Virus record (IMG/VR): IMGVR_UViG_3300027834_000005
Span: 124,001-188,000 of that record
Strand: one strand, 5' to 3'
Length of the DNA: 64,000 bases
Shown one piece after another: positions 42,207 through 59,132 of this stretch. Each line of letters begins with the position of its first letter. Position 1 is the stretch's first letter. A program made the translations under genes and the position numbers. The notes below the pieces were generated by a model that was given only the letters and a program-made list of their open reading frames with translations, made no database searches and was not told the DNA's origin.

Positions 42207-42218
42207 GGGACAAAATAA

Positions 42219-43706: not shown

Positions 43707-45340
43707 TGGCTAATTACAAAGAGTATATAGTCGTAGTTAACGAAGGAGTCCTAATCAGTGATGTCGAAATAGATCTGATTAGGGATACTAAGCTTGACAG
43801 TGTTGTAGATAGTAATGTAGTTCCTGACAGGACATGTGAGGTTGCTTTAGAGAAGTCAACGAACGACAGAATAACACATTTTTATTTAACTGATGCTGAA
43901 GCTAAAAATTTAAAGAGTGATAGTAGAATTCTTGATGTTCATTTAAAACCTACAGTGTGTAAATCATTAATGCAAACTCAGACTTCTAACTTTAGTAGGA
44001 CTGATACGTTAAGAGATGATCTAGTTAACTGGGGATTAAAAAGGCATATAGAATCGGTAGTTGATACTAACGCGGTTAATGACGTATATGAAGTTGATTA
44101 CGGGTATAATTTAGATGGTGACGGCGTAGATATTATTATACAGGACGACGGCATACAAACGGATCATCCTGAATTCCAAGACGAACATGGTTTTAGTAGA
44201 GTTAAAGAAATAGATTGGTATGCCGAGTCAGGTATGGCCGGAGAAATGCCTTCTAGTTTCTATTCTACGACTACTGCGGACCCTAATCATAATGGTGGCC
44301 AACACGGAACTCATGTTGCATCAGTGGCTGCCGGTAAAACGTATGGGTGGGCAAAGAAAGCTAGAATTTACTCCATGAGAATTTTTGGAGGTCCTAATCA
44401 TGAAATAGACTACGCTGAAAGTTTTGATTTGATTAGGATGTGGCATGAGAATAAGCCAGTAGATCCTAACACCGGAGTGAAAAGGCCTACGATTGTAAAT
44501 CAGAGCTGGGGATTTGCGTATTACTATGATAATTCGCCGACTGCTAATCCGTCTATAACTAATATTTTTTATAAAGGCGTGGATCAAGGGTATAACGGCG
44601 GAGAATCAAGGAAAGTTTCTTTAGGTATGGTTTCGCCAGTACATCCAATAAGCGTGCCTTCCGTGGACGTAGAACAGCAACAATTAACAGACGCTGGTGT
44701 AATATGTATACATTCTGCCGGTAATAGTTTGCACGCCCAGACAAGCCAGTACCCAGAATATAATAGCGATATATATGATTCATATTATACTAGAGAAGAT
44801 ATATGGGCAGGTATGGTTATGCCTAATGATCCGATATATTACAATAGAGCTATGTCACCGAACAGCAGAGATACTATTACTGTCGGTGGTATGAGTAATG
44901 AGATACAGGGAACGGATGAATTGGCAGATAGGAACAGTGAGCGAGGCCCATTAATAGATGTTTGGGCTGCGGGTTCTAGTATTATGGCTGCTACTAGCGA
45001 TACATCTAATAACGTAGAAAATGTAGTGTATCCTGACGATAACGCCTATTATATATCTAGACTTAGTGGTTCGTCAATAGCGACACCTCAAGTATCAGGT
45101 ATGTTATGTTTATTGGCGCAGATGCACCCTTCGATTACACCGGCTCAGTGCAAACAGTTCATAACTACAAATTCAGTGAGTGGGATCTTAGATACGCCTT
45201 CGTCCGAAGACTGGACAGACGGTAATACGAACGATAGTACGTATGGATCACCGGATAGAATACTACATTGGCCTTACGGATCTGGCATTAATACAGTTGT
45301 GGAAGGAAACACAGAAACTAATTTCACGAATATCACGTAA
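43706..45340 (+). CDS. Subtilisin-like S8 serine protease
   Basis: Catalytic Asp (VDIIIQDDG), His (HGTHVASVAAG), oxyanion Asn (SAGN), Ser (SGSSIATP). Start ATG 43706 overlaps the upstream TAA. Confidence 0.9.
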   Translation: MANYKEYIVVVNEGVLISDVEIDLIRDTKLDSVVDSNVVPDRTCEVALEKSTNDRITHFYLTDAEAKNLKSDSRILDVHLKPTVCKSLMQTQTSNFSRTDTLRDDLVNWGLKRHIESVVDTNAVNDVYEVDYGYNLDGDGVDIIIQDDGIQTDHPEFQDEHGFSRVKEIDWYAESGMAGEMPSSFYSTTTADPNHNGGQHGTHVASVAAGKTYGWAKKARIYSMRIFGGPNHEIDYAESFDLIRMWHENKPVDPNTGVKRPTIVNQSWGFAYYYDNSPTANPSITNIFYKGVDQGYNGGESRKVSLGMVSPVHPISVPSVDVEQQQLTDAGVICIHSAGNSLHAQTSQYPEYNSDIYDSYYTREDIWAGMVMPNDPIYYNRAMSPNSRDTITVGGMSNEIQGTDELADRNSERGPLIDVWAAGSSIMAATSDTSNNVENVVYPDDNAYYISRLSGSSIATPQVSGMLCLLAQMHPSITPAQCKQFITTNSVSGILDTPSSEDWTDGNTNDSTYGSPDRILHWPYGSGINTVVEGNTETNFTNIT

Positions 45341-45344
45341 AGCT

Positions 45345-45352
45345 GATAAATA
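45345..45352 (+). promoter_or_regulatory. Late promoter GATAAATA
   Basis: TGATAAATAGT upstream of an AGAGGA RBS and ATG 45381. Confidence 0.75.
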
Positions 45353-45380
45353 GTGTAAAATGAATTAAGAGGATACTATC

Positions 45381-45920
45381 ATGGTAACCAGAGTAAACGG
45401 CGGCGTCATTAATGACCAAATGCTAAAAGGTAAGTTAAGATTTTTCAAGATTGTTGGTCCTGCTAATGCGTTCCAATATACTATTGGTACAGACTCAGTG
45501 GGTGACGGAACAGGCATCCCAAACGTAGTCGTGCCCAATACTAATACAGCAATCAATGACGCTAATACCGCATTGTATGTTGAGAAAGTTGGTATTAAAC
45601 AGCCATCACCTAATTCAGTAGCTGAGTATGTTATTAGTGCTATATTAGAGAAGTGCACCGTGTCTATGATCAAGATAGTTAGTGACACTGAAATCCACGT
45701 CGCTATCGAAAATACTTCTAATGGTTGGGACACAACTTCTTCCGGTGAGTACGATTTCGATACAGGCCTTGATATAGATTCTGATGCCGCAGCTAATATG
45801 CTTGCTGTCATTAAAGATGGTGGAACTTTAACAAATGTACCTGACATAACTAATACTGGAAAAAGCTTCGACACCGCAACATTAGTTTCAGTTACTGAAG
45901 TTCCTTTCGTACTGGTATAA
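45381..45920 (+). CDS. Virion protein, paralog family A (179 aa), possible head decoration
   Basis: MVTRVNGGVINDQMLKGKLRFF is shared with the genes at 49650 and 50325. Confidence 0.65.
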   Translation: MVTRVNGGVINDQMLKGKLRFFKIVGPANAFQYTIGTDSVGDGTGIPNVVVPNTNTAINDANTALYVEKVGIKQPSPNSVAEYVISAILEKCTVSMIKIVSDTEIHVAIENTSNGWDTTSSGEYDFDTGLDIDSDAAANMLAVIKDGGTLTNVPDITNTGKSFDTATLVSVTEVPFVLV

Positions 45921-45933
45921 GGGGTAACTAGCC

Positions 45934-46182
45934 TTGGATAAGAGAAGATCACTGCTCCATGAAATGAACGATTACATTCCTCATAAAGATAAAGAGAGTG
46001 TAGTCGAATCTAGGGCAAACCATATAATTACGTCAGCTATAAATCTTTTAGAAGATATACACTCTAACTTTACGGAGGAAGAGGCTGAAGTCTTGGAAAA
46101 AAGACTCATGAGCAGTATAAAAAATAGAGATTATGGTCGGTTTGATAAACAGATACGTAAGATTAAGGAGTCTAAGAAATGA
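45934..46182 (+). CDS. Small helical protein, probable head-internal (82 aa, TTG start)
   Basis: AGGGGT 8 nt before TTG; SLLHE and VVES motifs. Confidence 0.65.
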   Translation: MDKRRSLLHEMNDYIPHKDKESVVESRANHIITSAINLLEDIHSNFTEEEAEVLEKRLMSSIKNRDYGRFDKQIRKIKESKK

Positions 46183-46880
46183 GATTTAAAGACCTCTTCG
46201 AAGCGCCAAGAAACAATCCAGCTGATCTAGCTAAAAAAGTAGGCAGTGTTAATGATGCCGAACGTGATAGAAAAGAAACTATTAGGAAAAGAAATTCATC
46301 TAATGGTAAATTGGGCGCACAGACTAGAGCAATGAATAAAGATTTCAAAGCTCTTAATAAAGAACTAAAGAATGATGCCAAGGCAAAGGCTGCTGATCAA
46401 CAAGCTGCCGTAGAACCTGAGCCGAATAAACCTAATACCGACATGTCTTCGGCTGAAAAGGATTTAATTGCTCCGTTCATAAAAAGTCAAATCCGCGATA
46501 GAAAAAGAAAGCGTGGAGTTGAAGGTGACCAAGGCGTAGAAGAAAGAGACGTATTAGATTACGCTCAAGAAAAATATCCAAATGTTGACGCTCAAGAATT
46601 AGAAGGTTTATGGAAGCAAGTTTCTGGTGGAGATAGTTCCCCTAAAGCAACTGACGTAGAGACCCCTTACGGTAGCGGTAAGGACGAAGATCCCCAGCCT
46701 AATCAAGATGAACCCAAGACGCAGAAGAAGCCTAGAAGAAAACCTAGTGGCGGATCTGGCGGTGGAAGTTCTCCAGAAGGGTCAGTATCTAGTAAGGACA
46801 TGGGTAGAATCTTAGATAGAATAAAATCTATGTCAATGAAAGAATTAAAATGGTTTAAGAAGGCGATACGTAATGACTGA
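46179..46880 (+). CDS. Highly charged protein, probable internal head protein (233 aa)
   Basis: ATGA coupling; N-terminus MRFKDLFE; low-complexity K/E/P/G tail. Confidence 0.65.
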   Translation: MRFKDLFEAPRNNPADLAKKVGSVNDAERDRKETIRKRNSSNGKLGAQTRAMNKDFKALNKELKNDAKAKAADQQAAVEPEPNKPNTDMSSAEKDLIAPFIKSQIRDRKRKRGVEGDQGVEERDVLDYAQEKYPNVDAQELEGLWKQVSGGDSSPKATDVETPYGSGKDEDPQPNQDEPKTQKKPRRKPSGGSGGGSSPEGSVSSKDMGRILDRIKSMSMKELKWFKKAIRND

Positions 46881-47589
46881 TACCTCAATGAGCGACTTAA
46901 TTGCTATTGCCGAAGGTAAAGTAATTACAGGGTCCGAAGCAAGACATAGAATAGAATCTGCTGTAAAAAAACACGGTATAGAATCCGAGTTAGGTAGAAT
47001 CCTCGACGTATGGGATCAAGAATACGGCGGACAGTCTAAGACTGCAGACGTAAACCACATTAATAGATTTCTTAAGAAAGAAGTCGGTGACATAAAAGTA
47101 TCCAAGAAGAAGCAGCAAGTCGGTAGAGACATAGCGGACTTAGCTAGGTTTGTAAAAGACCATGGTATAGCTGATCGTATCATGGACATGATTGACACGT
47201 ATCGCGTAGGCGGTAAAAGAGATAAAGCTGGTAGAGTGTTGAAAGGCGTTAAGCGTGCAATGTTCGGTGAGAGTATCTTGCATGAAAGCGATGTGTCTGA
47301 TGACGTGGTTAGGGATTTCTTTGAACTTCTAGTGCAGAACTACGGTGACCCTACGACTAGTGAAGGCATAACAGAAAGTATAGTCGATGACTTTTTAGAT
47401 ACTAAGTTAGACAGAAATAAACTTAATAGTATAATGTCCACTATTGAAGATAATAATCAGAGTGGCGCATTTAACGCGGTTAAAGATAGTATCCTTAGTA
47501 AATGGGGAGACTCCGCATTCGACACTAGTACTCTTAGGTCCATAAGCGATGAGCTAACAACGTTGAGTCAGAAAGGACTGGACATATAA
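46873..47589 (+). CDS. Probable internal head protein (238 aa)
   Basis: Coupled operon gene; IAE, LHES, ITES motifs. Confidence 0.65.
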   Translation: MTDTSMSDLIAIAEGKVITGSEARHRIESAVKKHGIESELGRILDVWDQEYGGQSKTADVNHINRFLKKEVGDIKVSKKKQQVGRDIADLARFVKDHGIADRIMDMIDTYRVGGKRDKAGRVLKGVKRAMFGESILHESDVSDDVVRDFFELLVQNYGDPTTSEGITESIVDDFLDTKLDRNKLNSIMSTIEDNNQSGAFNAVKDSILSKWGDSAFDTSTLRSISDELTTLSQKGLDI

Positions 47590-48101
47590 TGTTTGAGTTA
47601 CTAGGTGATTTGTCTGAAAGTAAATCTTTCAGATGTCAGAAGTCGTTAGATAAGATAGAGGAGCAGAGATCGAGAGACCTTCTGTTCGCGCACGTGTGTA
47701 TACTAATGTGTTTGATTCAGGAAGAAGATACTAAAGACAATGCACAGAGATATATGTCTAAGGCCATCGCATTTGGGAACTTTGACTTTTTCAGATCTTC
47801 CGGTAATGATTTGTATATGTTGGCGTACAATGAGAAAGAAAATAAATATTTTGACGAGAAAGGGTTGATTAGGTTTGTCCAAAGTGTTATAATGGGCAAC
47901 TACAATTTCATATATACATACCTGAATAAACTCCAAACGTCATTAGGTGTCAAAAATTCTACCTTTACCAGATTCAAAAGATACGCTGGGTATTGGGATA
48001 GAATTTCTGAAAGAGAAAAGCGTAGAGCTTTGGAAATGGTTCTTATAGATATAAGAAAAGATATGCCAATGTCCGAGCTGTACCATATGATTAGGAGATA
48101 A
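47589..48101 (+). CDS. Hypothetical virion-associated protein (170 aa)
   Basis: TAATG coupling; N-terminus MFELLGDLSES. Confidence 0.65.
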   Translation: MFELLGDLSESKSFRCQKSLDKIEEQRSRDLLFAHVCILMCLIQEEDTKDNAQRYMSKAIAFGNFDFFRSSGNDLYMLAYNEKENKYFDEKGLIRFVQSVIMGNYNFIYTYLNKLQTSLGVKNSTFTRFKRYAGYWDRISEREKRRALEMVLIDIRKDMPMSELYHMIRR

Positions 48102-48103
48102 GT

Positions 48104-49555
48104 ATGTCAGGTAATAAAGTTATACTGTCGGCAGATGTTATTAGGAATGCCGCCAAAGAATTAGGAATGGTAGAACCGGCTGAAGAAGGTTCGATCTTAG
48201 CCGCGATAGACGATTACTTCTTAACGTTAGCCAACGGACAGTATAGTCCGATGTCAGGTGAACATAATAATGCCTCTAATTATAATGAGGTGTATATAGT
48301 TGCTAAGAAGCATAACGTAGATCCTAATTTAATGATGAAGTATCTAACACATACCTCTATTTTTGATAAATTCCAGAAACTTTCCGTTAATGAAAGTATG
48401 TTACCGGATTACATTGGTACTCGAATTAAGTCTAAATTGAAACCGGAAGCGTATAAGAAATTTAAAGGTGATGCTGTTAACGCAGTTGTCAAGGCACTTA
48501 TGAAAGGTGCTAACCTTGGTACTATAGTTGATTCTATCTCAGGTACATATTCAATACCTAGAAAAGAACTGCTTAGTGCAGTGAGAGATGTAACTTCCGC
48601 TGATGGAAGTTATGGTGTCACAGAGGAAGACGACGTGAAAAAGAAGAAAGGTATCGAAGGTAAGAAGGGCGGTAGTAATCCAGTCCAGAAGAACTTGAGA
48701 GAGTTCAATAAGGGCGGAAGACACACCGATAAGAAAAACGACTATCGTAGAAAAGAGAAGCATTCTAAAAGCTCTGCTACTACAGAGGGCTACAGAGTCG
48801 TACCTTCAATTGATAAAGATAGATACCAGAATCGTGAGTGGGAAGGCCTAGAAGGTCCATACTCTAATAAGCACGGAAGAGTCTACTACTATGACACTAA
48901 AGCAGGTAAGTACTACGACCCAGACACCGACATTTATATGGCTGTCGATGATGTTATGGAATCTAAAGTAGGAAGTGCTCTGCAAGAATCTGTAAATAGA
49001 TTCATTAGTGTATTAGAGGGTAAACAGATGAGTATATATCAGGCCAAGTTAATAAACTTACTTGATAATATGAATGCTGATTATCTTTTTACTGGGGATA
49101 AAGTATTATTGGAAGAGCCATTAGGTTCACAGATACTTGAGAAGTTCCCAGAGATGGCTGGTCTTATTATCACACGAGGTAAGAAGGTGACTGAGACTAT
49201 AGCTGGTAATATAGCTGGTAGTGCACAACCTATCGGTGATATGCAGAAGAGAAGAGGTATTGCTGAGATAGAATACGAAAAGATGGAAGACGGTGAAGTA
49301 GAGCTTGATGAGTATGATGGAAGTGATGATCGCGGATCTGATCAAGAAGCCAACCTTAAGTTCCTGAAGCAGTCTATGCGTCAAGGCGGAGAGATAACAG
49401 TATACGGGGCGGACTACCGCGCACGTGTATTCAAATATGATTTTGATAATGATATCTGGACCGATACGACGAAAGGTAAGACGTACTCCACTGAAGAGTT
49501 GTCCGGTGTTCTTAAAAGAAATAACGGCGAATCTTTTGTTGAGTCTAAAAAGTAA
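48104..49555 (+). CDS. Modular probable internal head protein (483 aa)
   Basis: Short modules separated by hydrophobic-X-E-(S/G/T/E) motifs (VNES, VTEE, VMES, LQES, VLEG, VTET, FVES). Confidence 0.65.
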   Translation: MSGNKVILSADVIRNAAKELGMVEPAEEGSILAAIDDYFLTLANGQYSPMSGEHNNASNYNEVYIVAKKHNVDPNLMMKYLTHTSIFDKFQKLSVNESMLPDYIGTRIKSKLKPEAYKKFKGDAVNAVVKALMKGANLGTIVDSISGTYSIPRKELLSAVRDVTSADGSYGVTEEDDVKKKKGIEGKKGGSNPVQKNLREFNKGGRHTDKKNDYRRKEKHSKSSATTEGYRVVPSIDKDRYQNREWEGLEGPYSNKHGRVYYYDTKAGKYYDPDTDIYMAVDDVMESKVGSALQESVNRFISVLEGKQMSIYQAKLINLLDNMNADYLFTGDKVLLEEPLGSQILEKFPEMAGLIITRGKKVTETIAGNIAGSAQPIGDMQKRRGIAEIEYEKMEDGEVELDEYDGSDDRGSDQEANLKFLKQSMRQGGEITVYGADYRARVFKYDFDNDIWTDTTKGKTYSTEELSGVLKRNNGESFVESKK

Positions 49556-49594
49556 ATAAATATACTCGTTTTGATACACGTTTTGTGTATAAAT

Positions 49595-49602
49595 GATAAA
49601 TA
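49595..49602 (+). promoter_or_regulatory. Late promoter GATAAATA
   Basis: Upstream of an AGGAG RBS and ATG 49650. Confidence 0.75.
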
Positions 49603-49649
49603 CAATTAAGAGCGCGATAAAGCGCATAAAAAAATTTAGGAGAAATATT

Positions 49650-50201
49650 ATGGTTGCTAAAGTAAATAGTGGCGTATTCAAGGATCAGGTTTTAGCTGGT
49701 TCATTAAGAGCATTTGTAATTGGTGGTGTAACTTTAACAGCTGGTACTTTATCAGCTCCAGTAGCATCTGCAGACGACCAAGAATGGACGTTATCAGCTG
49801 GATCTACAGTAAAATATAACGACCAAGACGCTGTTCCAGATACAGCTGCTGAAATGGTTTATCGTATCTTATCTACTCGTTCTACCGTTGTGTCTATCGA
49901 GTTTGAAACAGTTACTGATACAGTTCATGTTATCTTAGAAAATGCTTCTGGTTGGGGCTACACTAAGGCTGACGGCGTATTAGCTGATCTAGAAGCTGAA
50001 CTTCAAGGTTTAGGTGCTACTTTCGCAGTTTCTGTTGAAGGTGCGGTTGCTGGTACAGGCGACTTCTCTGCGGCAACTGCTGTAGAAAATAGAATGGTAT
50101 TTGATGCTGTTAATGGTGCAATTGCTGCTCCAGCAGTTGGTGGATTGGGCGGTAACGAACACGACCAAGATACTGACAGTAACGCGAAAACTGCTCCTTA
50201 A
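49650..50201 (+). CDS. Abundant virion protein, paralog family A (183 aa), candidate head decoration protein
   Basis: ATG 49650 with AGGAG (the track start at 49593 overlaps the promoter); capsid-like codon usage; own promoter and terminator. Confidence 0.7.
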   Translation: MVAKVNSGVFKDQVLAGSLRAFVIGGVTLTAGTLSAPVASADDQEWTLSAGSTVKYNDQDAVPDTAAEMVYRILSTRSTVVSIEFETVTDTVHVILENASGWGYTKADGVLADLEAELQGLGATFAVSVEGAVAGTGDFSAATAVENRMVFDAVNGAIAAPAVGGLGGNEHDQDTDSNAKTAP

Positions 50202-50226
50202 TCGGAAACAGTTTAGTATCATAAGA

Positions 50227-50250
50227 AGCTCACTTAGGTGGGCTTTTTTT
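50227..50250 (+). terminator. Rho-independent terminator
   Basis: AGCTCAC-TTAG-GTGGGCT followed by a T run; near-identical to the gp23 terminator. Confidence 0.9.
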
Positions 50251-50289
50251 ATGCCTGTAATAAACCAATAGAACACATGCTCATTCTTT

Positions 50290-50297
50290 GATAAATA
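50290..50297 (+). promoter_or_regulatory. Late promoter GATAAATA
   Basis: TGATAAATAGT upstream of an AAGGA RBS and ATG 50325. Confidence 0.75.
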
Positions 50298-50324
50298 GTG
50301 TAAAGATATTTGAAAGGATAAAAC

Positions 50325-51512
50325 ATGGTTCTTAAGGTGCACGGCGGACTTATAAATGACCAGTTCTTAACGGGCAACCTAAGACACTATAGTGTTACGG
50401 GAGCTGACTTTAGCAATGCTATAAGTGACGGAACTTTTATAATTCCCAATGGTGGCGGTCCCAATATAGATCTAGTTGTAGGTGAAGGCCAACCTGTGCC
50501 TGATTCAGCCGCGTCAATAATAATGAATGAAGTTGCTAAATTAGCGACTGTCGTAATCACAAATCCAACAGCGGAAGGATTATATTTCGCTCTAGAGAAC
50601 GACGATAACGACTGGACCATTGCCGAACTACAGACCATGATCCAAACGTTAGGGACAGTAGGGGTTGATGGAGTCGATGTGAGTGCCGCCATTGTTACAG
50701 GAACGGCATATATTTTATATCAGGGCGGATCAGGTGGGTCATCTGACTTCCTAGGTTTAACCGATACACCGGCAGATTATAGCGGGTTTGCTGGTTATTC
50801 TGCTGTAGTAAATCCTGCTGAAGATGGTCTTATTTTTGTTGATGTGACTGGTGGAGGAACAACATCACTAGTTAACCTTTTTGATACTAACCCAACCGCA
50901 GTGCCCGATGGCATTCTGAGATGGAATACCGCAGGTAATATAGTAGAATACGTCACGACCATAGAAGCAGATATAGTGTCTCTAGATGCCTCCTCGTTCG
51001 GTGGTAATTTAAGTCCTTCAGACACTGATGTCCAGACAGCTATGGAGACAATTGATCAGATGACCGCAACTGGCGGTGTCGATTCAGTTATGATAGATGG
51101 CCAACATGTACTAGTTCTAACAGACACTACGAGGGGCGATAAAAGACTGTCAGTATCTGAACAAACTATAATGTTCTCCGCTAATAAACTTAGAGACTTA
51201 GAATGGATGAACATAGGTAATGCCGTATCGGCTAAATCATCTTATGTTGCAGATTTCAACGGGACAGTAGTGTATATAAGTGGGCATTGTGAAGAAACAT
51301 TCGCTGAAGATAAGGACCTACATCTATATGTGAATGAAATCAATCTAGGGTACGTGGGCACTTTGTCCGGTGGAACTAACGCAATATTGATAGCGAACAC
51401 GTTGGATTTAGATTTTAATAAGGGTGATAGGCTAAGGCTTAGAGCAGTCGGCGGGACCGAAACTATAGAAGATACTGTAGTTAAAATAACAATAAAATGG
51501 AGAGCAGATTAA
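50325..51512 (+). CDS. Fibre/adaptor protein: N-terminal domain A plus C-terminal domain B (395 aa)
   Basis: N-terminus MVLKVHGGLINDQFLTGNLR; the last 137 aa align without gaps to the C-terminus of the next gene. Confidence 0.7.
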   Translation: MVLKVHGGLINDQFLTGNLRHYSVTGADFSNAISDGTFIIPNGGGPNIDLVVGEGQPVPDSAASIIMNEVAKLATVVITNPTAEGLYFALENDDNDWTIAELQTMIQTLGTVGVDGVDVSAAIVTGTAYILYQGGSGGSSDFLGLTDTPADYSGFAGYSAVVNPAEDGLIFVDVTGGGTTSLVNLFDTNPTAVPDGILRWNTAGNIVEYVTTIEADIVSLDASSFGGNLSPSDTDVQTAMETIDQMTATGGVDSVMIDGQHVLVLTDTTRGDKRLSVSEQTIMFSANKLRDLEWMNIGNAVSAKSSYVADFNGTVVYISGHCEETFAEDKDLHLYVNEINLGYVGTLSGGTNAILIANTLDLDFNKGDRLRLRAVGGTETIEDTVVKITIKWRAD

Positions 51513-51544
51513 ATTCTGCCGCATAGACAAAAAGGAATATAAAA

Positions 51545-53485
51545 ATGGCTGGAACATTCTTAGTAAGAAAATTAGATGCGTCTGCGGTAGTAATTGACGA
51601 TCTTGGTATCACTATATCGGGAACGGCAGGAACAACGTATGATCTTATAGACATACAACCAAATAATTTATCAGTAAGTGATAATTTGGTAGCTGCTATA
51701 GGGGTTACATTAGAAGTACTGGACCCTAGGGATGGCACAACAGCACTATCTACTGCGGATGGAGTATTGACAATAGAGAGTTGTAACTCTCCTCATTTCG
51801 GTATTAACGGCGGTAGGTTTGCGGCACTTGATGATCCAGCAGTTACCCCAGCGACATCAACATATTTGAAATTTGATGGTACTGAGTACGTAGCTTCTGA
51901 CGCCTCAGATTTAACTGATGAGATAGGCAATGACGTACAGGATCTTATTGAATCCACGCTCATAGACGGTTCGGATATTACTTTCGTGGTTGATGCGGGT
52001 ACTGGTAATAACGACAAGACAATCACTATTAACGTTGATGACTCATTCCTGCGTAATACGGGTGATAATCTAACTAGTGGCACGTTAACTATTGATAGTG
52101 GCGCTGCAATTACCGTATCAACTGGCGCAGCTTTAACTATAGCGGACGCACCTGTAAATCCCCAAGACGCAGCTAATAAAGCGTATGTTGATTCTATATC
52201 TGCAGGTTTAGACCCTAAAGAATCTGTTAGAGTGGCATCTGCCGCAGATTTAGCAGCAACGTATGTTCCAGCTGGAGGAACCGCAGGGACTGGGTCATTT
52301 ACATCCGCACCGACTTTAATAGATGGTGTAGTGTTAGTTAACGGAGACAGGGTTTTAGTAAAAGACCAGTTCGATGCTAAACAGAATGGTATTTATGAAG
52401 TTATAGCGTCTACTATATGGAACAGAGCAGAAGACCAAGATGGTGATCCAGCAACTGAAGTTTCTTCAGGTAACTACACATTTGTAGAGCAAGGTACGGC
52501 ATCTGGTTCGACAGGATGGGTAGTAACTGGAGATGGAATCTTAACACTTAATGTTGATGATATTGTGTGGGTGCAGTTCTCTGGTACTGGAGCATACACA
52601 GCAGGCGTAGGTTTAGGTCTTTCAGGGTCTGAATTTTACTTAGATATTAATAACCTAGTTTCGGATACTATTACGTCTGCAGATTCTATAGCGTTCAATG
52701 ATATTGATGCTCCTAATACTACTAAGAAAATTACATTGTCAAGTATGTTATCTGATCTTGATATCGTAAATAGTCTTAGTGGTAATGGTATAGCGGTACA
52801 GACTGCAGCTGACACGTACACTGCTAGATCTATTATCCCTTCGACTACTGCGGCACAAGAAGGTATATTAGTAGTGAATGGGGATGGCGTGGCTGGCAAC
52901 ATGTCAGTCGGTCTTGATATTAACGGTCTTACGGATAGTGCTGCTGACCTAACTGCCACTGACGAATTGGCTGTGTTTGACGGCACTAACAATTTAAGTA
53001 TGTCAGGGCAGCAACTAGCGGATGGCGTGGGAACGTTATTAGGATTAGGTTCGTTGACTTTGACCACCATAAATGGCCAGACAGTTTTGACTATAGTAGA
53101 TAGTACTAGAGGTAATAAGATTTTATCTGTTGATTCAGTTGAACTAACATTCAGTGAGAACAGAGTGAATCATTTAGATTGGTTGGATATCGGAAACGCA
53201 GTAGACGCGGATAGTGGTTTCGTGGCTCCTATGAACGGGACTATTGTGATGGCCACAGGAAACTGTGAGAATACCGGAGCTAACAGTAAGGATTTTCATG
53301 TGTTCGTAAATACTACTGATCAAGGGTCACTAGGTACGCTTTCAGGTGGTACTAATGTAGTATTCACTAACACCACTGCTAACTTCGACTTTACGCAGGG
53401 CGATAGAATACGTGTGCAGGCAAATGACGTATCAGGAAGAATCCAAGATACGGTTGTGTCGGTATACATTAAATGGAGAGGATAA
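51545..53485 (+). CDS. Fibre protein: N-terminal domain C plus C-terminal domain B (646 aa)
   Basis: Contains DAANKAYVD and the phage fibre module KESVRVA...LVNGDRVLVKDQ...QNGIY...WNRAED. Confidence 0.75.
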   Translation: MAGTFLVRKLDASAVVIDDLGITISGTAGTTYDLIDIQPNNLSVSDNLVAAIGVTLEVLDPRDGTTALSTADGVLTIESCNSPHFGINGGRFAALDDPAVTPATSTYLKFDGTEYVASDASDLTDEIGNDVQDLIESTLIDGSDITFVVDAGTGNNDKTITINVDDSFLRNTGDNLTSGTLTIDSGAAITVSTGAALTIADAPVNPQDAANKAYVDSISAGLDPKESVRVASAADLAATYVPAGGTAGTGSFTSAPTLIDGVVLVNGDRVLVKDQFDAKQNGIYEVIASTIWNRAEDQDGDPATEVSSGNYTFVEQGTASGSTGWVVTGDGILTLNVDDIVWVQFSGTGAYTAGVGLGLSGSEFYLDINNLVSDTITSADSIAFNDIDAPNTTKKITLSSMLSDLDIVNSLSGNGIAVQTAADTYTARSIIPSTTAAQEGILVVNGDGVAGNMSVGLDINGLTDSAADLTATDELAVFDGTNNLSMSGQQLADGVGTLLGLGSLTLTTINGQTVLTIVDSTRGNKILSVDSVELTFSENRVNHLDWLDIGNAVDADSGFVAPMNGTIVMATGNCENTGANSKDFHVFVNTTDQGSLGTLSGGTNVVFTNTTANFDFTQGDRIRVQANDVSGRIQDTVVSVYIKWRG

Positions 53486-53488
53486 AAA

Positions 53489-56400
53489 TTGTCTATTATA
53501 ATTAAGAATGTTTCAGTGTCATTGGTCCCTATCAATGACATTGGTATAACAGTTGGGATAGGACTAACATACGATGTGTCTATAATAGATGCATCGGACG
53601 TTTCTGCTAGTGCGGTGGACGGTGATATTTTTGACGTCGTGAGCGCAGGCGATATCGTAGTAATAGATCCAAGAGATAACATAACTGAATTGGGAGTGGC
53701 CGACAGTCTTGTTGTCCTACGTGCGCATAATGATTCGCACTATGGTATGGCGGCAGGATCAAGAATCATTGACGCCGAAGACGTCGATGATACCGGACTA
53801 GCTAATGGGGATATTTTAAAGTGGGGCGGAACTGATTTCCAAACTGTGGCTAATGACCATGACGATTTAACCAATATTTCTGGTGGTGGTGTTGGAGATT
53901 ACCAACATTTCACTACTGCTGAAAAAACCAATATTAATGCTGTTGCATCTACAACTGGACATACTGGTTGGTTATCTGGTGGTGATGTGTCTATCGGTAC
54001 TAACCCTAATGAGGTTACAGTGTCTGCCGGTACAGGTAGAATCATAAGATATACAGATCCGCTTAATCCTGTCGTGACCGAAGTGTCATGGCCGCAATTA
54101 ACAGACGTGCCAATAACCGACATAGCCACAACGATAACGACTACTTTGGGGATTAACTCACTAGGTCAATTAGTGCAGTTCCCAGATTCTATTTTAGAAA
54201 GACTAGACTATAAAGAATATATTTTAATAGGATTTATATCCCATTTAGATAATACCTCTATCGATCAGTTTTCTAGTAGTCCGTCAATGGTTGCGTATGA
54301 CGGCGTAGCTAATGTTGCTGATTTCATTAGGTCAGCCGGTGCCGTTCTCTTAGAGGGTAATAAGGTCTCTGGCGTAGCAGGAACATTACAATTGGCAAAG
54401 ACTAGTGGTGAGGTTTTCTCTTACGGTACTAATGCCAGTTCAGAGCCAGAAATACCGGACGTTGCGCCAACAATAGCAACACTAGGGAATAATTTCTTCC
54501 TTGGCCATAGAGATCCCAGTACCACTGATACTTATCTGTCAGTAATAACTAACGTTATTGATCCGTTACAGTGGGACGATAATGGCGTTTTGACTGTGGT
54601 TGGGAATAACAGGTGGACAATTATGCCTGTGTATCTAATTTCCGCCATAAACTTTATAGTAGTGGGCTACGGACAAACAACATACGTGAATTTGAGTGAA
54701 GCACTGACTGATTTGAGAAATGGCACTCATGTCTGGGAAGAAAGAGCGCAGTTAAAAAATAGTGCGTTCTTGGGTCATATTGTAGTGAAGAAAGAAGCTA
54801 CCGACTTAACTGATGAGTTAGAAGCGACATTTGTGTTAGCTCCAACACTGAGAGAAGCATTACGTGGATCGTCAGGTTCAGGAAACACTAGTGGTGGCGG
54901 CGGAGTTTCTGCTTGGGGCGATATAACAGGAACGTTATCTGACCAGACTGATTTACAATCTGAATTAGACACATTAACAGCGCACACAGTGGATACTGCT
55001 AATCCACACGACACTACTGTGAATAATTTAGATGACACAGTGATTACGTCTCCAGTATCAGGAGAACATCTAGTTTATAATGGGTCATCGTGGGTAAATG
55101 ACTCGCCGTTAGTTAATCTTCCATTAGTGCAAGTCCGTAGAGAAACATCCATGAATAATTTGGGTACTGGATGGAACGATGTGTATTGGGAAAATACTGA
55201 TTTTGAAAATAATACAGATTACTTAGAACTTAGTGGCGCGGATGCTAGATACGTTCTATTGAAAACTGTTGGGTTCTATTTATTTGAATATAAAACTACT
55301 GGTCTGACGTCCGTTGGCGGAAGGTTAATGTTAGATGGTGGCACATACATAGTGGGGTCTGAAACAGACCCTGTTGGTCTTACATCACAAAGTGGACTGG
55401 ATAGTACGCGAATGGAAGGCATAGCGACTGCGCAAGTAATAGTCGAATGTACTGCACCTAACCAAACGGTTCATTTACAGTTGCGTTCCAATAATGTCCA
55501 GCAAGATGATACTGATAAAATTAGTATGAATGCGGTAGCTTTAATAGGTGTTCAGGGCGTGTCAGGTGCCAACGGACAAGGAGTTCCTTCTGGCGGAATA
55601 GCGGGACAAGTTTTGACAAAGGTTGACGGGACCGATTATAATACGGAATGGGCAATTCATGTGCCTAGTCATAATGAATTTTTTGTGGCTAAGAATGGAA
55701 ACGACACTACTGGTGAAGGAACTAACGATAATCCTTATCTTACTATTAATAAGGCAATAACAGAAATTAACACGCTTAGCCCAAGTGTAACAAATCGCTT
55801 CCAAGTAAACGTATCTCCAGGTATTTTTTCTGAGTCGCCGTTTACTATACCGGCTGGGGTAGATGTGGTATGTAAGACTTCTATAATAGTTGCGGCAGAC
55901 GCAGCTAATGATTTCATAACTCTAGACGGTAGTGGAAATATATATGGTGCCGACGTACAAGGCGTTACTGGAGCAGGAAAATACTGTATAGTTTGTTCAG
56001 GTACAGGAACGTCAACGAGTATTATTCGTGAGTGTACTATTGGGTATCTTTCTACGGGAGCAATAAAAGCATCGAGTACGGTAATAGGGCACTCTGTCAT
56101 AATATCGTTCAGTAATATAATTGCATTTAGTGAAGATGGTGTGTATGTAGATACCAATTCAGATGTTATATATTCTGAAGGACTTATATTTGGCAACGGA
56201 ACAACCGCGAGAGGAGTTGTGACTAACGGCAGTGGGACATGCACAGTTACGTCTTTGATAGTCGAAAGCTGCGGTACTGGGGCATACCATAACTCGACAG
56301 GAACATTAAAGTCAGTCGGGTCAAGTTTTAATCCTTCTAATTTAATACCTGTGACTAGAGTTGGTACGTCCCCGTTAGTGGTGAGATCTACCGACTTAGA

Positions 56401-57646
56401 ATCTGAAAAATTAAACACGTTGACTACCGAAAATATATCTGGTTCTTTTTATGACTTATCTCAAGGGGAACCGAAGTTCAGATTAGTGGATGAGTTGTCA
56501 GTTGGATTACCAGGAAATGGATCTGAATCAGCCTTTGGTGAAGGTGATAGTTTCGTAAATGGAATGTTAGTGTGGTCGTGGGATGGAACAACATTCACGG
56601 ATGTATCAGAAGAAGCATCGAGTACTACAGGCTCCACCTTATCATATCCTAATTTGAATGTTGGTTCAGCACTTTATTTCTCAACGGCTCGCACCGTAGT
56701 AGACACAGGAGACTTCATGAAGTTCTATAATATAAAGATCTCGCAAACTGTTCCTACTGACAACACGGGTGAATTAGTCGCGGAATATTGGAATGGTAGT
56801 ACGTGGGTTGAATTAAATCATATGAGTACCGAAGCGGAATCGAATGGCACGTATAGGGCATTCGCTAAGGAAATATTTCAGGGAACTGGATCAGAACATA
56901 TTAGATTCGACAGTCATATAGATCCTTTGTGGGTAGCAAACGATGCTGTTGGTATGGGCATCTCTACGTATTGGATACGTATCAGAATAGAAACTGCGCT
57001 AACGGGGAACCCTACTTTTGAGAAAATTAAAATAGGAACTAACCGCACGGAAATAAATGCAGATGGGTTTATTGAATACTTTGGTGATGCTAGACCGACT
57101 AGCGCTTTGCCATTTGATACAAGTACGTTTATTGCCGCGAATAATTCACCGGCAAATAATGATGTGTATTTAAGTGACACGCTAGGCGTAGGTAGGGTAG
57201 AAAACGAATTTCAATCGGGAGTAACAGATAGATGTGGTATGGTATTGCCGTTCCCACCGGAAATAGACACCTCTATGCCGATACATGCTAAATTCCATTT
57301 TATATCGGACAGTGCAGACACAGGTACGTTTACTTTTGTTCTGAGGCACGCGAGTTCTAGGCAAGGAGATGGAGTTTATTCAAATACCGCATCAGCGCCA
57401 TCGACTGCACCAGGACAACAAACGATAACAGTTCTGAAAGCTCCGCCAGCTATACACCAGCAATTCTTAGTTGAGTTTGACTTGGACATATCTGATGTAA
57501 TAGCTCGTAACGCAGATGGGTCATCGGATTTATTCTGGCTAACGCTGCAGCGCACAGGCGGAACGGATGCCAATACAGGAAATGCAATAATGGTGCAGTT
57601 AGAAGTAACGTATGTTAGGTGGGCTTCAGGAGGTCACATAGAATGA
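53489..57646 (+). CDS. Large fibre/receptor-binding protein with domain C and a putative parallel beta-helix (1385 aa, TTG start)
   Basis: GGAGAGGA RBS; FVAKNGND..G.G..DNPYLTINKAI...VSPGIFSE is the usual entry into a pectate-lyase-like beta-helix; also carries GQGVP.GG..GQVLTK. Confidence 0.7.
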   Translation: MSIIIKNVSVSLVPINDIGITVGIGLTYDVSIIDASDVSASAVDGDIFDVVSAGDIVVIDPRDNITELGVADSLVVLRAHNDSHYGMAAGSRIIDAEDVDDTGLANGDILKWGGTDFQTVANDHDDLTNISGGGVGDYQHFTTAEKTNINAVASTTGHTGWLSGGDVSIGTNPNEVTVSAGTGRIIRYTDPLNPVVTEVSWPQLTDVPITDIATTITTTLGINSLGQLVQFPDSILERLDYKEYILIGFISHLDNTSIDQFSSSPSMVAYDGVANVADFIRSAGAVLLEGNKVSGVAGTLQLAKTSGEVFSYGTNASSEPEIPDVAPTIATLGNNFFLGHRDPSTTDTYLSVITNVIDPLQWDDNGVLTVVGNNRWTIMPVYLISAINFIVVGYGQTTYVNLSEALTDLRNGTHVWEERAQLKNSAFLGHIVVKKEATDLTDELEATFVLAPTLREALRGSSGSGNTSGGGGVSAWGDITGTLSDQTDLQSELDTLTAHTVDTANPHDTTVNNLDDTVITSPVSGEHLVYNGSSWVNDSPLVNLPLVQVRRETSMNNLGTGWNDVYWENTDFENNTDYLELSGADARYVLLKTVGFYLFEYKTTGLTSVGGRLMLDGGTYIVGSETDPVGLTSQSGLDSTRMEGIATAQVIVECTAPNQTVHLQLRSNNVQQDDTDKISMNAVALIGVQGVSGANGQGVPSGGIAGQVLTKVDGTDYNTEWAIHVPSHNEFFVAKNGNDTTGEGTNDNPYLTINKAITEINTLSPSVTNRFQVNVSPGIFSESPFTIPAGVDVVCKTSIIVAADAANDFITLDGSGNIYGADVQGVTGAGKYCIVCSGTGTSTSIIRECTIGYLSTGAIKASSTVIGHSVIISFSNIIAFSEDGVYVDTNSDVIYSEGLIFGNGTTARGVVTNGSGTCTVTSLIVESCGTGAYHNSTGTLKSVGSSFNPSNLIPVTRVGTSPLVVRSTDLESEKLNTLTTENISGSFYDLSQGEPKFRLVDELSVGLPGNGSESAFGEGDSFVNGMLVWSWDGTTFTDVSEEASSTTGSTLSYPNLNVGSALYFSTARTVVDTGDFMKFYNIKISQTVPTDNTGELVAEYWNGSTWVELNHMSTEAESNGTYRAFAKEIFQGTGSEHIRFDSHIDPLWVANDAVGMGISTYWIRIRIETALTGNPTFEKIKIGTNRTEINADGFIEYFGDARPTSALPFDTSTFIAANNSPANNDVYLSDTLGVGRVENEFQSGVTDRCGMVLPFPPEIDTSMPIHAKFHFISDSADTGTFTFVLRHASSRQGDGVYSNTASAPSTAPGQQTITVLKAPPAIHQQFLVEFDLDISDVIARNADGSSDLFWLTLQRTGGTDANTGNAIMVQLEVTYVRWASGGHIE

Positions 57647-58515
57647 TAAATTATGGAATATACAGTAAGAGTAAGGGGCTGTTCATAAGAACATACGAAT
57701 ATCACCGCATGAAAGAGTTCGGTGATATGTATGCTGATCCAGATCTAGTTCATATACAACTATTAGGGGATTACCCAGAAGCCCATTACTGGGACGGATC
57801 TGCAGTTGCGTATAACGTGGAGTTTGAACCTGAAGTCGTTAAAGAATTCAAAATTTACGACTATCTAACTAACGAGGCTAAAAGGTATCATCGTGGCGGC
57901 ACCTATCTGCCAGTTGATATAGATTATAAGACTGGCTTGAAAGAAAAACTGCATCCAAGATATACCTACATAAAAGGTGAATTACAAAAGACCATATACT
58001 ACGGCACTTATGATGAATCTGAATCATTAGAGGCGGACAGGTTTAAAGATCCGACTGTGAGAGTAGATATTGTATACGAACGTGATGCCATGGGATTTGC
58101 TAGGAAAAGGACAACGGAAAGGTACTGGTATTATAAGGATGGTACTTATGATGTGACCCTTAGAAAGACGACAACTAAATATTACGATAATACGATGACT
58201 ATAGTTGAAGGTAAACGACGTCGTGGTAATATAGTGACTAATATGACAATGCCTATAATGGGTATGATGATGGGCACGGAATTGGGAAAAGAAGGATCGC
58301 CTTTCTCTTCTCAGGAAGATATCATCATAGAAGGTCGTAGATGGCTAGCTTCCCATAAGGCGGACTTCATAGATTTTGTGGATGATTCCAACCCAACAAT
58401 TAGTGCTAGTATATCAACAGACGTTACTGCGTGGTTAGATAATTATATTGATGGTAACGGAACCACTATACGAATGTATATGTTGAACGAATTAAATATT
58501 CAGGACGTACTGTAA
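57643..58515 (+). CDS. Hypothetical protein, possible fibre assembly chaperone (290 aa)
   Basis: ATGA overlap with the fibre stop (track start 57619 is GTG inside the upstream gene); function inferred from position only. Confidence 0.55.
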   Translation: MINYGIYSKSKGLFIRTYEYHRMKEFGDMYADPDLVHIQLLGDYPEAHYWDGSAVAYNVEFEPEVVKEFKIYDYLTNEAKRYHRGGTYLPVDIDYKTGLKEKLHPRYTYIKGELQKTIYYGTYDESESLEADRFKDPTVRVDIVYERDAMGFARKRTTERYWYYKDGTYDVTLRKTTTKYYDNTMTIVEGKRRRGNIVTNMTMPIMGMMMGTELGKEGSPFSSQEDIIIEGRRWLASHKADFIDFVDDSNPTISASISTDVTAWLDNYIDGNGTTIRMYMLNELNIQDVL

Positions 58516-58526
58516 TAGTACAGTCC

Positions 58527-59132
58527 TTAAATATTTATATTGTCTTTTTTCCATTGACGTACTGTGGAAAAAGTTTCTAAGTGTGCACTATATTCGTGGT
58601 GCAGCTTTGCCAATTCTATAATCCCTATGGATATCTCACTTGTATAATCAAGCCTATCATAATCCGAACATACATGTTCTAGTACTGCCATGTCTTCTCT
58701 TATGGCGCTTAGTAATGAATCGTGTAGTGTGTCATCTTCGAATATACTAATAATCCATTTGTGAAAATTATTATCTGGGTCATACTTAAGAATTGCTTCT
58801 TGGAGTGAAAGGTATAAAGCCTTAACAGGATTCAGTCCTTTTCTATATCGACATAACACAGACGGAAACATAAACTTTGAGTTTCTCGTTTTTAAATTTA
58901 ATAATATGGATTCTTTAATGAATAAGAAATCTTCATTTAATATTGCAGTCTGCTCATTACGAAATTCTTGTAATGTTTGTTCATAAGACTTCCTAGTGGT
59001 AGTGGAGCCATGTACTGATATGAGTGATATGTTCTGTGTTATGTTTTCTGAAATGATTCCTGCACTTTCGAATTTCTTCAAATCGGTCTTAAATATATAT
59101 GTTTCTAAATCTACTACATTAGACATATTCAT
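58527..59132 (-). CDS. Hypothetical helical protein (about 200 aa)
   Basis: Follows NUDIX in the same operon; start may be 59126. Confidence 0.65.
   Translation of the reverse strand: MNMSNVVDLETYIFKTDLKKFESAGIISENITQNISLISVHGSTTTRKSYEQTLQEFRNEQTAILNEDFLFIKESILLNLKTRNSKFMFPSVLCRYRKGLNPVKALYLSLQEAILKYDPDNNFHKWIISIFEDDTLHDSLLSAIREDMAVLEHVCSDYDRLDYTSEISIGIIELAKLHHEYSAHLETFSTVRQWKKDNINI

What the first reader, a model, noticed from the sequence alone, without database searches (positions are those of the whole stretch)
49650..57646. Domino chain of shared terminal domains across four consecutive genes: [A] - [A..B] - [C..B] - [C..beta-helix]
Seen: the C-terminal 136 aa of the 395-aa and 646-aa proteins align without gaps (about 66/136 identical by hand count; 51099-51512 versus 53075-53485). 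The N-termini of the 646-aa and 1385-aa proteins share I(D/N)D(L/I)GIT...TYD...DPRD...L..AD.......N..H(F/Y)G. Inference: a modular appendage built by like-with-like docking (A to capsid, B to B, C to C) that ends in a receptor-binding or depolymerase fibre, i.e. a branched head-fibre system.
Basis: partly seen in the sequence, partly recalled or inferred. Interest (0 to 1): 0.65.

Follow-up and report, generated by a model that had tools for sequence, protein, structure and literature searches.

The report
Serially jointed phage fibre gene chain
Four neighbouring genes of an uncultured giant phage encode fibre segments whose shared end domains most likely form a repeated socket-and-plug joint, the end knob of one protein receiving the start of the next; this layout is common in uncultured phages and was found in no sequenced, deposited phage.

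Summary
B (g395 257-393 vs g646 509-645) is 49% identical without gaps. C (the N-termini of g646 and g1385) is 31% identical. A is shared by g202, g395 and a third gene, g179. The window lies in a 347-kb jumbo myovirus related to Pseudomonas phage PA5oct.

B folds as a TNF/C1q-like jelly-roll knob and always sits at a C-terminus. A and C always sit at an N-terminus.

Across 26 loci, a gene ending in B is immediately followed by a gene starting with C in 39 of 43 cases. A C gene is preceded by a B gene in 38 of 39 cases. Nine records each hold equal numbers of B and C. One 98%-complete 55-kb provirus has exactly one of each, adjacent.

The best reading is a head-to-tail joint: knob B of protein n receives N-domain C of protein n+1. 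The joint comes in two matched versions (B1/C1, B2/C2). It strings together an anchor segment, an extension and an exchangeable distal fibre. Physical binding is inferred, not shown. Whether the fibre sits on the head or the tail is unresolved; synteny leans towards head or neck.

The parts
45381..45920 (+). g179: small protein made of domain A plus about 55 residues (first A-only paralogue)
   Evidence: A-HMM E 2e-27. About 30% identical to g395 1-97. Orthologues with the same neighbour (g82) occur in L008 and L024.
47589..49555 (+). g170 and g483 (DUF7230): conserved genes upstream of the A-bearing pair
   Evidence: Pfam DUF7230 E 6e-8. Homologues precede the A-only/A-long pair in L004, L008 and L009.
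49650..50201 (+). g202 (183 aa from the real start): domain A plus an Ala/Gly-rich tail (second A-only paralogue)
   Evidence: BLASTP to g395, E 2e-7. A-HMM E 9e-26. Start ATG at 49650 with an AGGAG site. An A-only gene lies just upstream of an A-long gene in L004, L008 and L024; in L009 a 283-aa gene lies between them.
50325..51512 (+). g395, the proximal segment. A (aa 1-135, 50325-50729), short fibre repeats (aa 133-230), neck helix (aa 234-248), knob B1 (aa 252-395, 51078-51509).
   Evidence: AF2 pLDDT 83.7. B is a TNF/C1q-like jelly roll. A is an alpha/beta domain with no convincing structural match. B1 subtype signature.
51545..53485 (+). g646, the extension segment. C1 (aa 1-165, 51545-52039), fibre domain shared with T7-like and other fibres (aa 190-360, 52112-52624), repeats, neck helix, knob B2 (aa 503-646, 53051-53482).
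   Evidence: AF2. VIA Z 9.9 for B2. Residues 169-346 match the tail fibre of Legionella phage LME-1, 9EFK, E 1e-9. Conserved over its full length at 37-47% in other lineages.
53489..57646 (+). g1385, the distal exchangeable segment. C2 (aa 1-160, 53489-53968), domain at aa 158-451 shared with a 502-aa paralogue and with Streptomyces phage tailspike/minor tail proteins, candidate right-handed beta-helix (aa 722-1000, 55652-56488), C-terminal region of unknown fold.
   Evidence: C-HMM E 5e-51. TTG start with a GGAGAGGA site; its N-terminus aligns with those of homologues..
57643..58515 (+). g298 (290 aa from the ATG at 57643, overlapping the stop of g1385 as ATGA): lineage-specific downstream gene. 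It may be an assembly factor for g1385; this is inference only.
   Evidence: AGGAGG site 9 nt upstream. No family hit. No homologue in L004.

Best explanation
The genes encode trimeric fibre segments that are joined head to tail in gene order. The C-terminal TNF/C1q-like knob (B) of one protein is the socket. The N-terminal domain (C) of the protein encoded immediately downstream is the plug. This phage uses the joint twice, in two matched versions. g395 is anchored by its N-terminal domain A and offers knob B1. g646 plugs in with C1 and offers knob B2. g1385 plugs in with C2 and carries the variable business end, a probable beta-helix enzyme or receptor binder. The 'domino' of shared ends arises because the same joint family is reused in series, not because like binds like. 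Shown here: the domain homologies, the folds of A and B, the terminal positions of A, B and C, the B-then-C adjacency rule, and the matched subtypes. Inferred: that B and C touch, that the proteins are trimers, that they are virion parts, and where the chain is attached. The small A-only proteins g179 and g202 probably share the docking site or oligomer of domain A; their role is open.
For: Adjacency rule over 26 loci (the window, relatives found through proteins, and 17 IMG/VR loci ascertained by B alone). 38 of 43 testable B-ending ORFs are followed within -120..+450 nt by a C-starting ORF; this becomes 39 of 43. 38 of 39 C-starting ORFs are preceded by a B-ending ORF. The one exception has a 272-aa ORF inserted between the two genes. 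The median gap is 22 nt. Whole-record counts give equal numbers of B and C: the window's own genome 2/2, G005 3/3, G006 2/2, G007 3/3, G008-G010 2/2. A 55-kb provirus that is 98% complete has 1/1, adjacent. B1/B2 and C1/C2 are separable subfamilies (leave-one-out 28/30 and 29/30). In the two-gene loci L025-L028 a B2-type knob is followed by a C2-type domain. B lies a median of 1 residue from the C-terminus in 107 proteins of 86-1645 aa. C and A always start at the N-terminus. B is well conserved (about 40-60% identity across lineages whose terminase is 36-40% identical), whereas the part behind C2 is hypervariable; this suits a joint better than a host-range tip. The N-terminal part of the first protein varies: A, a short peptide ending in LTRP, or other domains. 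This fits a lineage-specific anchor. Precedents: in phage 7-7-1 the C-terminal triple jelly roll of the long tail fibre contacts other virion proteins. The TNF-like ExsF binds an N-terminal peptide of a fibre anchor (PDB 9h3d, known here from its title only). T4 long tail fibres are non-covalently jointed segments encoded in assembly order (established knowledge).
Against: Gene adjacency can persist by descent alone. Mantel correlations do not favour B-C pairs (B1-C1 0.43, B2-C2 0.51) over C1-C2 (0.60) or C1-B2 (0.55). No B-C fusion protein was seen among 165 relatives. TNF-like knobs at fibre ends can be lectins or receptor binders (BC2L-C, PLTL, Sf6 needle knob). Four B-ending ORFs are not followed by C. 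L018 shows one mismatched and one ambiguous subtype pair. No member comes from a cultured phage, so no virion data exist.
Confidence: 0.5

Rival explanations
1. Independent fibres. Each protein is a separate homotrimeric fibre with the usual polarity. A and C are anchors that plug into virion sites (C1 and C2 into paralogous sites). B is a distal ligand-binding or folding knob. Shared ends reflect duplication and module shuffling only, and adjacency is inherited.
For: N-terminal anchor plus variable C-terminus is the standard fibre layout, as in the RaK2/CBA120 systems and 7-7-1 gp015. Anchors and tips recombine freely: L007 has D-B, C-B and C-Y, while L005/6 has peptide-B, C-B, C-BclA_C and D-Y. 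B resembles TNF-like lectins and phage needle knobs.
Against: It does not explain why C is preceded by B in 38 of 39 cases across very different genome contexts. It does not explain why B and C counts are equal in every record, why B subtype predicts the next gene's C subtype, or why a supposed receptor tip is among the most conserved parts.
Confidence: 0.25
2. One reading: like-with-like docking. B1 binds B2 and C1 binds C2, so g646 lies in reverse polarity between g395 and g1385.
For: Both paralogue pairs are kept in 15 chains. Paralogous hetero-oligomers often derive from homo-oligomers. gC1q trimers can pair head to head (PDB 9lkk, known here from its title only). C1-C2 distances correlate (r 0.60).
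Against: The 98%-complete provirus G001 has exactly one B and one C. The stretches held for L027 and L028 also hold one B|C junction each, and the two-gene junctions of L025-L028 have no like partner beside them. B1-B2 distances do not correlate (r 0.19, not significant). The model needs a fibre with reversed polarity, for which I know no precedent. The C-C complex job gave no answer, which counts neither way.
Confidence: 0.08
3. Shared node. B and C do not bind each other. Both bind a third component, for example a capsid or collar protein, so that the end of one fibre and the start of the next meet at the same node, forming a net rather than a linear chain.
For: It would give the same adjacency and count rules. 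In 7-7-1 the fibre's C-terminal jelly roll is held by separate garland proteins. Conserved small neighbouring genes exist: 78-104 aa upstream of the chain in L005, L007, L012 and L013.
Against: No third protein co-occurs with all B|C junctions. The provirus L026 and the T4-like loci share no obvious third gene.
Confidence: 0.1

Closest known systems
T4 long tail fibre (gp34-gp35-gp36-gp37)
   Same: A fibre made of several gene products joined non-covalently end to end, encoded in assembly order, with the distal segment carrying specificity (established knowledge).
   Different: There is no sequence relation: no PHROG or Pfam hit to these families. Here one joint family (TNF-like knob plus N-domain C) is reused, so segments can be concatenated or dropped; loci have one to three junctions.
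Branched receptor-binding complexes of CBA120 (TSP1-4), RaK2 (gp526-534) and phiKp24, the last two being jumbo phages of the same wider group as PA5oct
   Same: Several consecutive fibre or spike genes share conserved N-terminal modules needed for assembly and carry variable C-terminal enzymes. The setting is also a jumbo myovirus.
   Different: Those systems branch through T4 gp10-like XD domains near the N-terminus of a scaffold protein. Here the conserved partner of the N-terminal module is the C-terminal knob of the preceding protein. No XD-like domain was detected, although C's fold could not be searched on its own.
Long tail fibre gp015 of Agrobacterium phage 7-7-1 (PDB 9RKV)
   Same: N-terminal anchor, shaft and a C-terminal triple jelly roll, which is one of the best structural matches of B (Foldseek 2e-4, VIA Z 9.1). 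That jelly roll contacts other virion proteins.
   Different: 7-7-1 has a single fibre protein. Its partners are garland and short-fibre proteins, not the N-terminus of a next segment. There is no sequence similarity.
C1q/TNF superfamily knobs, including BclA and ExsF of Bacillus spores
   Same: The same 10-strand jelly-roll knob at the C-terminus of a trimeric stalk (Caprin-2 C1q 5e-5, 4-1BBL Z 9.9, BclA Z 8.4-9.0). ExsF binds an N-terminal peptide of a fibre anchor (PDB 9h3d, title only).
   Different: B matches no Pfam C1q, TNF or BclA_C model. The relation is one of fold only.

Membership tests
TNF/C1q-like jelly-roll knob (fold class) for domain B | Compact jelly roll of about 130-145 residues at the C-terminus, superposable on C1q/TNF heads | tested here: met
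   AF2 pLDDT above 90 over B in both proteins. Foldseek Caprin-2 C1q 5e-5 and 1e-4. VIA 4-1BBL Z 9.9, rmsd 2.4-2.9 over 108-113 residues.
TNF/C1q-like jelly-roll knob (fold class) for domain B | Sequence membership in Pfam C1q (PF00386), TNF or BclA_C | tested here: not met
   No Pfam hit at E up to 1 for residues 250-395.
TNF/C1q-like jelly-roll knob (fold class) for domain B | Forms trimers | not tested
Segmented (serially jointed) phage fibre, T4 LTF type | Gene order equals segment order, with the C-terminal module of gene n conserved together with the N-terminal module of gene n+1 | tested here: met
   B is followed by C in 39/43 cases and C is preceded by B in 38/39. Subtypes are matched and counts are equal in 9 records.
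Segmented (serially jointed) phage fibre, T4 LTF type | Physical contact between the two modules in the virion | not testable with these tools
   There is no cultured carrier.
CBA120/RaK2-type branched RBP complex | T4 gp10-like XD branching domains in a scaffold RBP | tested here: inconclusive
   No gp10-like family was found in Pfam or PHROGs. The fold-search lists were filled by B, so C and the shaft were barely searched.
Right-handed beta-helix depolymerase/tailspike (g1385) | Pectate-lyase-like beta-helix recognised by family models | tested here: inconclusive
   No Pfam match. The feature search of residues 722-1000 puts DUF1565/Beta_helix clusters first (0.93; all ten best hits in one clan), which is a lead only. 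The PHROG hit covers about 55 residues.
Head fibre / head decoration protein | Encoded in the head module and attached to the capsid | tested here: inconclusive
   Gene position fits. In provirus L026 the pair lies between the major head protein and head closure Hc1. In the window it lies after the MCP operon. In T4-like loci it lies about 5 kb from TerL. Attachment cannot be tested, and the central domain also matches tail fibres.

The most novel reading that the evidence does not exclude
A reusable socket-and-plug joint (a TNF/C1q-like C-terminal knob receiving a dedicated N-terminal domain) lets phages as different as 55-kb siphovirus-like proviruses and 350-kb jumbo myoviruses concatenate one to three fibre segments and swap the distal one. 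The fibre may be mounted on the head rather than the tail. The joint exists in two orthogonal specificities that enforce the order of assembly.
Probability: 0.4. Interest if true: 0.75.

Novelty: new variant of a known kind. Interest (0 to 1): 0.6.

Why it matters
If the B-to-C joint is real, it is a compact, modular and apparently orthogonal connector for trimeric fibres. It would explain how a large group of uncultured phages exchange receptor-binding ends without touching their anchor. It would also give a rule for reading fibre order straight from gene order in metagenomes. B has 977 relatives at 50% clustering, yet tblastn finds no A, B or C in 50,697 deposited phage genomes. The family is therefore a sizeable blind spot in current fibre annotation. 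It also corrects an attractive but wrong inference (like binds like) that sequence inspection alone suggests.

Tried and rejected
- Complex prediction on C(g646 1-165) plus C(g1385 1-160) gave 'no answer' (ipSAE 0.05, controls not run). It counts neither for nor against, and it used the only job before the B-then-C rule was found.
- Megablast of the region against deposited phages found no match.
- The search for related loci with g395 in IMG/VR found no confirmed relative. With the C alignment it had no usable conserved stretch.
- The word search with g1385 1-160 returned only the protein itself.
- hhalign of A against C shows they are unrelated (probability 1%).
- Mantel tests of domain distance matrices gave r 0.4-0.6 for every pairing except B1-B2 (0.19). 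They do not discriminate between the models.
- The sigma-70 promoter and terminator scan and the T4 late-promoter motif were at chance level.
- Fold searches for A and C were swamped by B. A's only listed match is an ACT domain (Z 7.5, 75 residues), which I do not take as meaningful. The Atlas gave TM 0.39.
- DUF7230 of g483 matches a small non-structural KVP40 ORF, which says nothing about virion location.
- Heterotrimeric B knobs (C1q-style) were considered and set aside. The shafts upstream of B differ in length and domain content between g395 and g646.
- Read-through of the in-frame TAA between g646 and g1385 was rejected as coincidence. g1385 has its own ribosome site and a conserved N-terminus, and other junctions are out of frame.
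Full report
**Setting**

The window is bases 124001-188000 of a 347,232-bp IMG/VR virus record that is 94% complete. It carries a T4-type core: portal, prohead protease, scaffold, major head protein, gp6-like wedge, hub and gp15-like neck protein. Its major head protein is 82% identical to that of Pseudomonas jumbo phage PA5oct.

The four genes lie on the + strand. Upstream is the head operon, followed by three fibre-like or protease genes: g976, g495 and g550. Downstream, on the opposite strand and convergent, are NUDIX, gp15-like and neck genes. In PA5oct the same slot holds a homing endonuclease and the virion protein gp324, 'tail fiber protein H'. gp324 is 33% identical to g976 in repeated segments.

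**Checking the observation**

All three homologies are real.
- B: 67/137 identical, no gaps, E 2e-41.
- C: 31% over 157 columns, E 5e-10.
- A: 26%, E 2e-7.

A third A gene, g179, lies 4 kb upstream. The start codons were checked against ribosome sites and against the N-termini of homologues: ATG 49650 for g202, TTG 53489 for g1385, and ATG 57643 for the downstream gene. HMMs of the three domains find exactly 3 A, 2 B and 2 C in the whole genome.

**What the domains are**

An exhaustive HMMER search with g395 found 977 representatives at E up to 0.001. The architectures seen are B alone 77, C..B 23, A..B 7 and A alone 20.

AF2 of g395 (pLDDT 83.7) gives four elements:
- an alpha/beta domain A (residues 19-130), preceded by a highly conserved but unmodelled N-terminal strand;
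- short fibre repeats;
- a neck helix;
- a jelly roll B.

B is TNF/C1q-like. The matches are Caprin-2 C1q at 5e-5, 4-1BBL at Z 9.9, BclA, PRD1 P5, and the C-terminal jelly roll of the 7-7-1 long tail fibre. The B domain of g646 gives the same result.

In g646, the C core (residues 1-85) is confidently modelled as a small alpha/beta domain, but its fold could not be searched on its own. Residues 169-346 of g646 match the tail fibre of the T7-like Legionella phage LME-1 (9EFK, E 1e-9). They also match generic fibre modules such as Mtd_N and lambda Stf repeats, as well as marine 'capsid decoration' proteins.

A and C are unrelated to each other. tblastn finds no A, B or C in 50,697 deposited phage genomes.

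**Conservation of the chain**

Protein-identity look-ups and an IMG/VR scan with a B alignment gave 25 further loci.
- The full four-gene form [A][A..B][C..B][C..] recurs in L004 and L024.
- The triple [..B][C..B][C..] occurs in 15 lineages.
- The middle protein is conserved over its full length (37-47%).
- The last protein keeps only C and is otherwise different in every lineage.
- The first protein keeps only B. Its N-terminal part is A, a roughly 25-residue peptide ending in LTRP (nine loci), or another domain.

The A genes form a separate syntenic unit: g179, g82..., g170, g483, an A-only gene, then an A-long gene. In L008 and L009 this unit occurs without B or C.

**The decisive pattern**

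Listing every B-ending and every C-starting ORF shows that the invariant is not two Bs and two Cs. It is B followed by C.
- 38 of 43 testable B genes have a C gene starting within -120..+450 nt on the same strand. This rises to 39 after one search revealed a weak C behind L022's 637-aa protein.
- 38 of 39 C genes have a B gene just upstream. The exception has a 272-aa ORF inserted between them.
- The median gap is 22 nt.

Loci exist with a single junction (L025-L028) and with three junctions (L018/G005, L022/G007). In nine records searched whole, the number of B equals the number of C. One of these is a 55-kb provirus, 98% complete, with exactly one of each, 9 nt apart.

B and C each split into two subfamilies that can be told apart: leave-one-out 28/30 and 29/30. 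The B subfamilies also carry signature residues. In the four genuine two-gene loci the pair is B2-type with C2-type. L021 and L023 also match, while L018 gives one mismatch and one ambiguous pair.

**Interpretation**

The simplest account is a head-to-tail joint. Knob B of protein n receives N-domain C of protein n+1. Two specificities, B1/C1 and B2/C2, fix the order anchor - extension - distal fibre. This account explains:
- why B is conserved while the region behind C2 is hypervariable;
- why the first protein's N-terminus changes with the type of virion;
- why segments can be added or dropped.

All three proteins keep the usual N-proximal polarity.

The model of independent fibres remains possible, but it leaves the adjacency, count and subtype rules unexplained.

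Contact between B and C is an inference. No binding or structure-prediction evidence was obtained. The one complex job, run on C-C before this pattern emerged, returned no answer. Distance-matrix correlations do not discriminate between the models.

**Head or tail**

Several findings favour head or neck.
- In the L026 provirus the gene order is TerL, portal, protease, gpD-like decoration, major head protein, three small or fibre-like genes, [..B], [C..], then head closure, Neck1, major tail protein and tape measure.
- In T4-like loci the chain lies about 5 kb from TerL and near gp23.
- In the window it follows the head operon. The baseplate genes, with their own 3999-aa giant protein, lie 30 kb away on the other strand.

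Against this, the fibre modules resemble tail fibres.

I leave the attachment site open, with a slight lean to head or neck.

**g1385**

The N-terminal C2 is followed by several regions.
- A domain at residues 158-451 is shared with a 502-aa paralogue in a second fibre cluster (genome 319-347 kb) and with Streptomyces phage tailspike/minor tail proteins.
- Fibre motifs come next.
- A region at residues 722-1000 has nearest feature neighbours that are DUF1565/Beta_helix/pectate-lyase clusters.
- A C-terminal stretch of 385 residues has no match.

The beta-helix reading is plausible but unproven.

**Comparison and novelty**

Segmented fibres (T4) and multi-protein branched receptor-binding complexes (CBA120, RaK2, phiKp24) are known. 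A reusable knob-to-N-domain joint with matched subtypes, in domain families absent from all deposited phages, is not one I could find described. I rate it a new variant of a known kind.

Noticed in passing
window 1461-13460 (- strand) and 13466-17494 (- strand): A 3999-aa ORF lies directly beside a 1342-aa gp6-like baseplate wedge protein (PHROG 10646, E 0). It is presumably a giant baseplate or tail fibre protein, separate from the chain studied here.
   Followed up: no
genome G000:C1 319000-347232 (outside the window): A second cluster of large fibre-like genes (485-1263 aa) shares mosaic pieces with the window. The g976 C-terminus resembles the C-terminus of a 1041-aa protein. The first 34 residues of g495 resemble the N-terminus of a 502-aa protein. 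g1385 220-441 resembles residues 110-326 of that same 502-aa protein. Two adjacent proteins (967 and 1041 aa) share their N-terminal 140 residues. The g976/g495 boundary therefore looks like a second duplicated 'end of one gene plus start of the next' unit.
   Followed up: partly
window 53483-53491: g646 and g1385 are in the same reading frame, separated only by TAA and one codon. I judged this a coincidence: g1385 has its own ribosome site and a conserved N-terminus, and other junctions are out of frame.
   Followed up: yes
window 43688-45340: A subtilase (Peptidase_S8, E 1e-25; PHROG 9158) is encoded inside the fibre gene block, between a collagen-like fibre gene (g495) and the first A gene.
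   Followed up: no
L023 5858-6673: The only C gene not directly preceded by a B gene has a 272-aa ORF inserted between the two. The ORF is similar to one at genome 11252-12265 and to an ORF in L025. It looks like a mobile insertion at the joint.
   Followed up: partly
L018 (record G005 47630-58700) and L022 (record G007 42187-50700): C-only proteins of 165-170 aa follow a B knob and are themselves followed by another long ..B protein and another C.. protein. They may be chain terminators or adaptors.
   Followed up: partly
genome G000:C1 about 30-38 kb, 51-84 kb, 206-208 kb and 226-228 kb (outside the window): There are large tandem families of paralogous ORFs of about 100-150 aa, with dozens of mutually similar copies, as is typical of jumbo phage accessory regions.
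   Followed up: no
window 57643-58515: The gene after g1385 starts at an ATG that overlaps the stop of g1385 (ATGA), with a strong AGGAGG site. It has no relatives in the syntenic locus L004. It may be a segment-specific assembly factor.
   Followed up: partly
The search for homologous proteins rows for P0002/P0003: The same proteins are also recorded on a 410,284-bp contig, longer than the 347-kb record. The phage genome may therefore be larger than the record held here.
   Followed up: no
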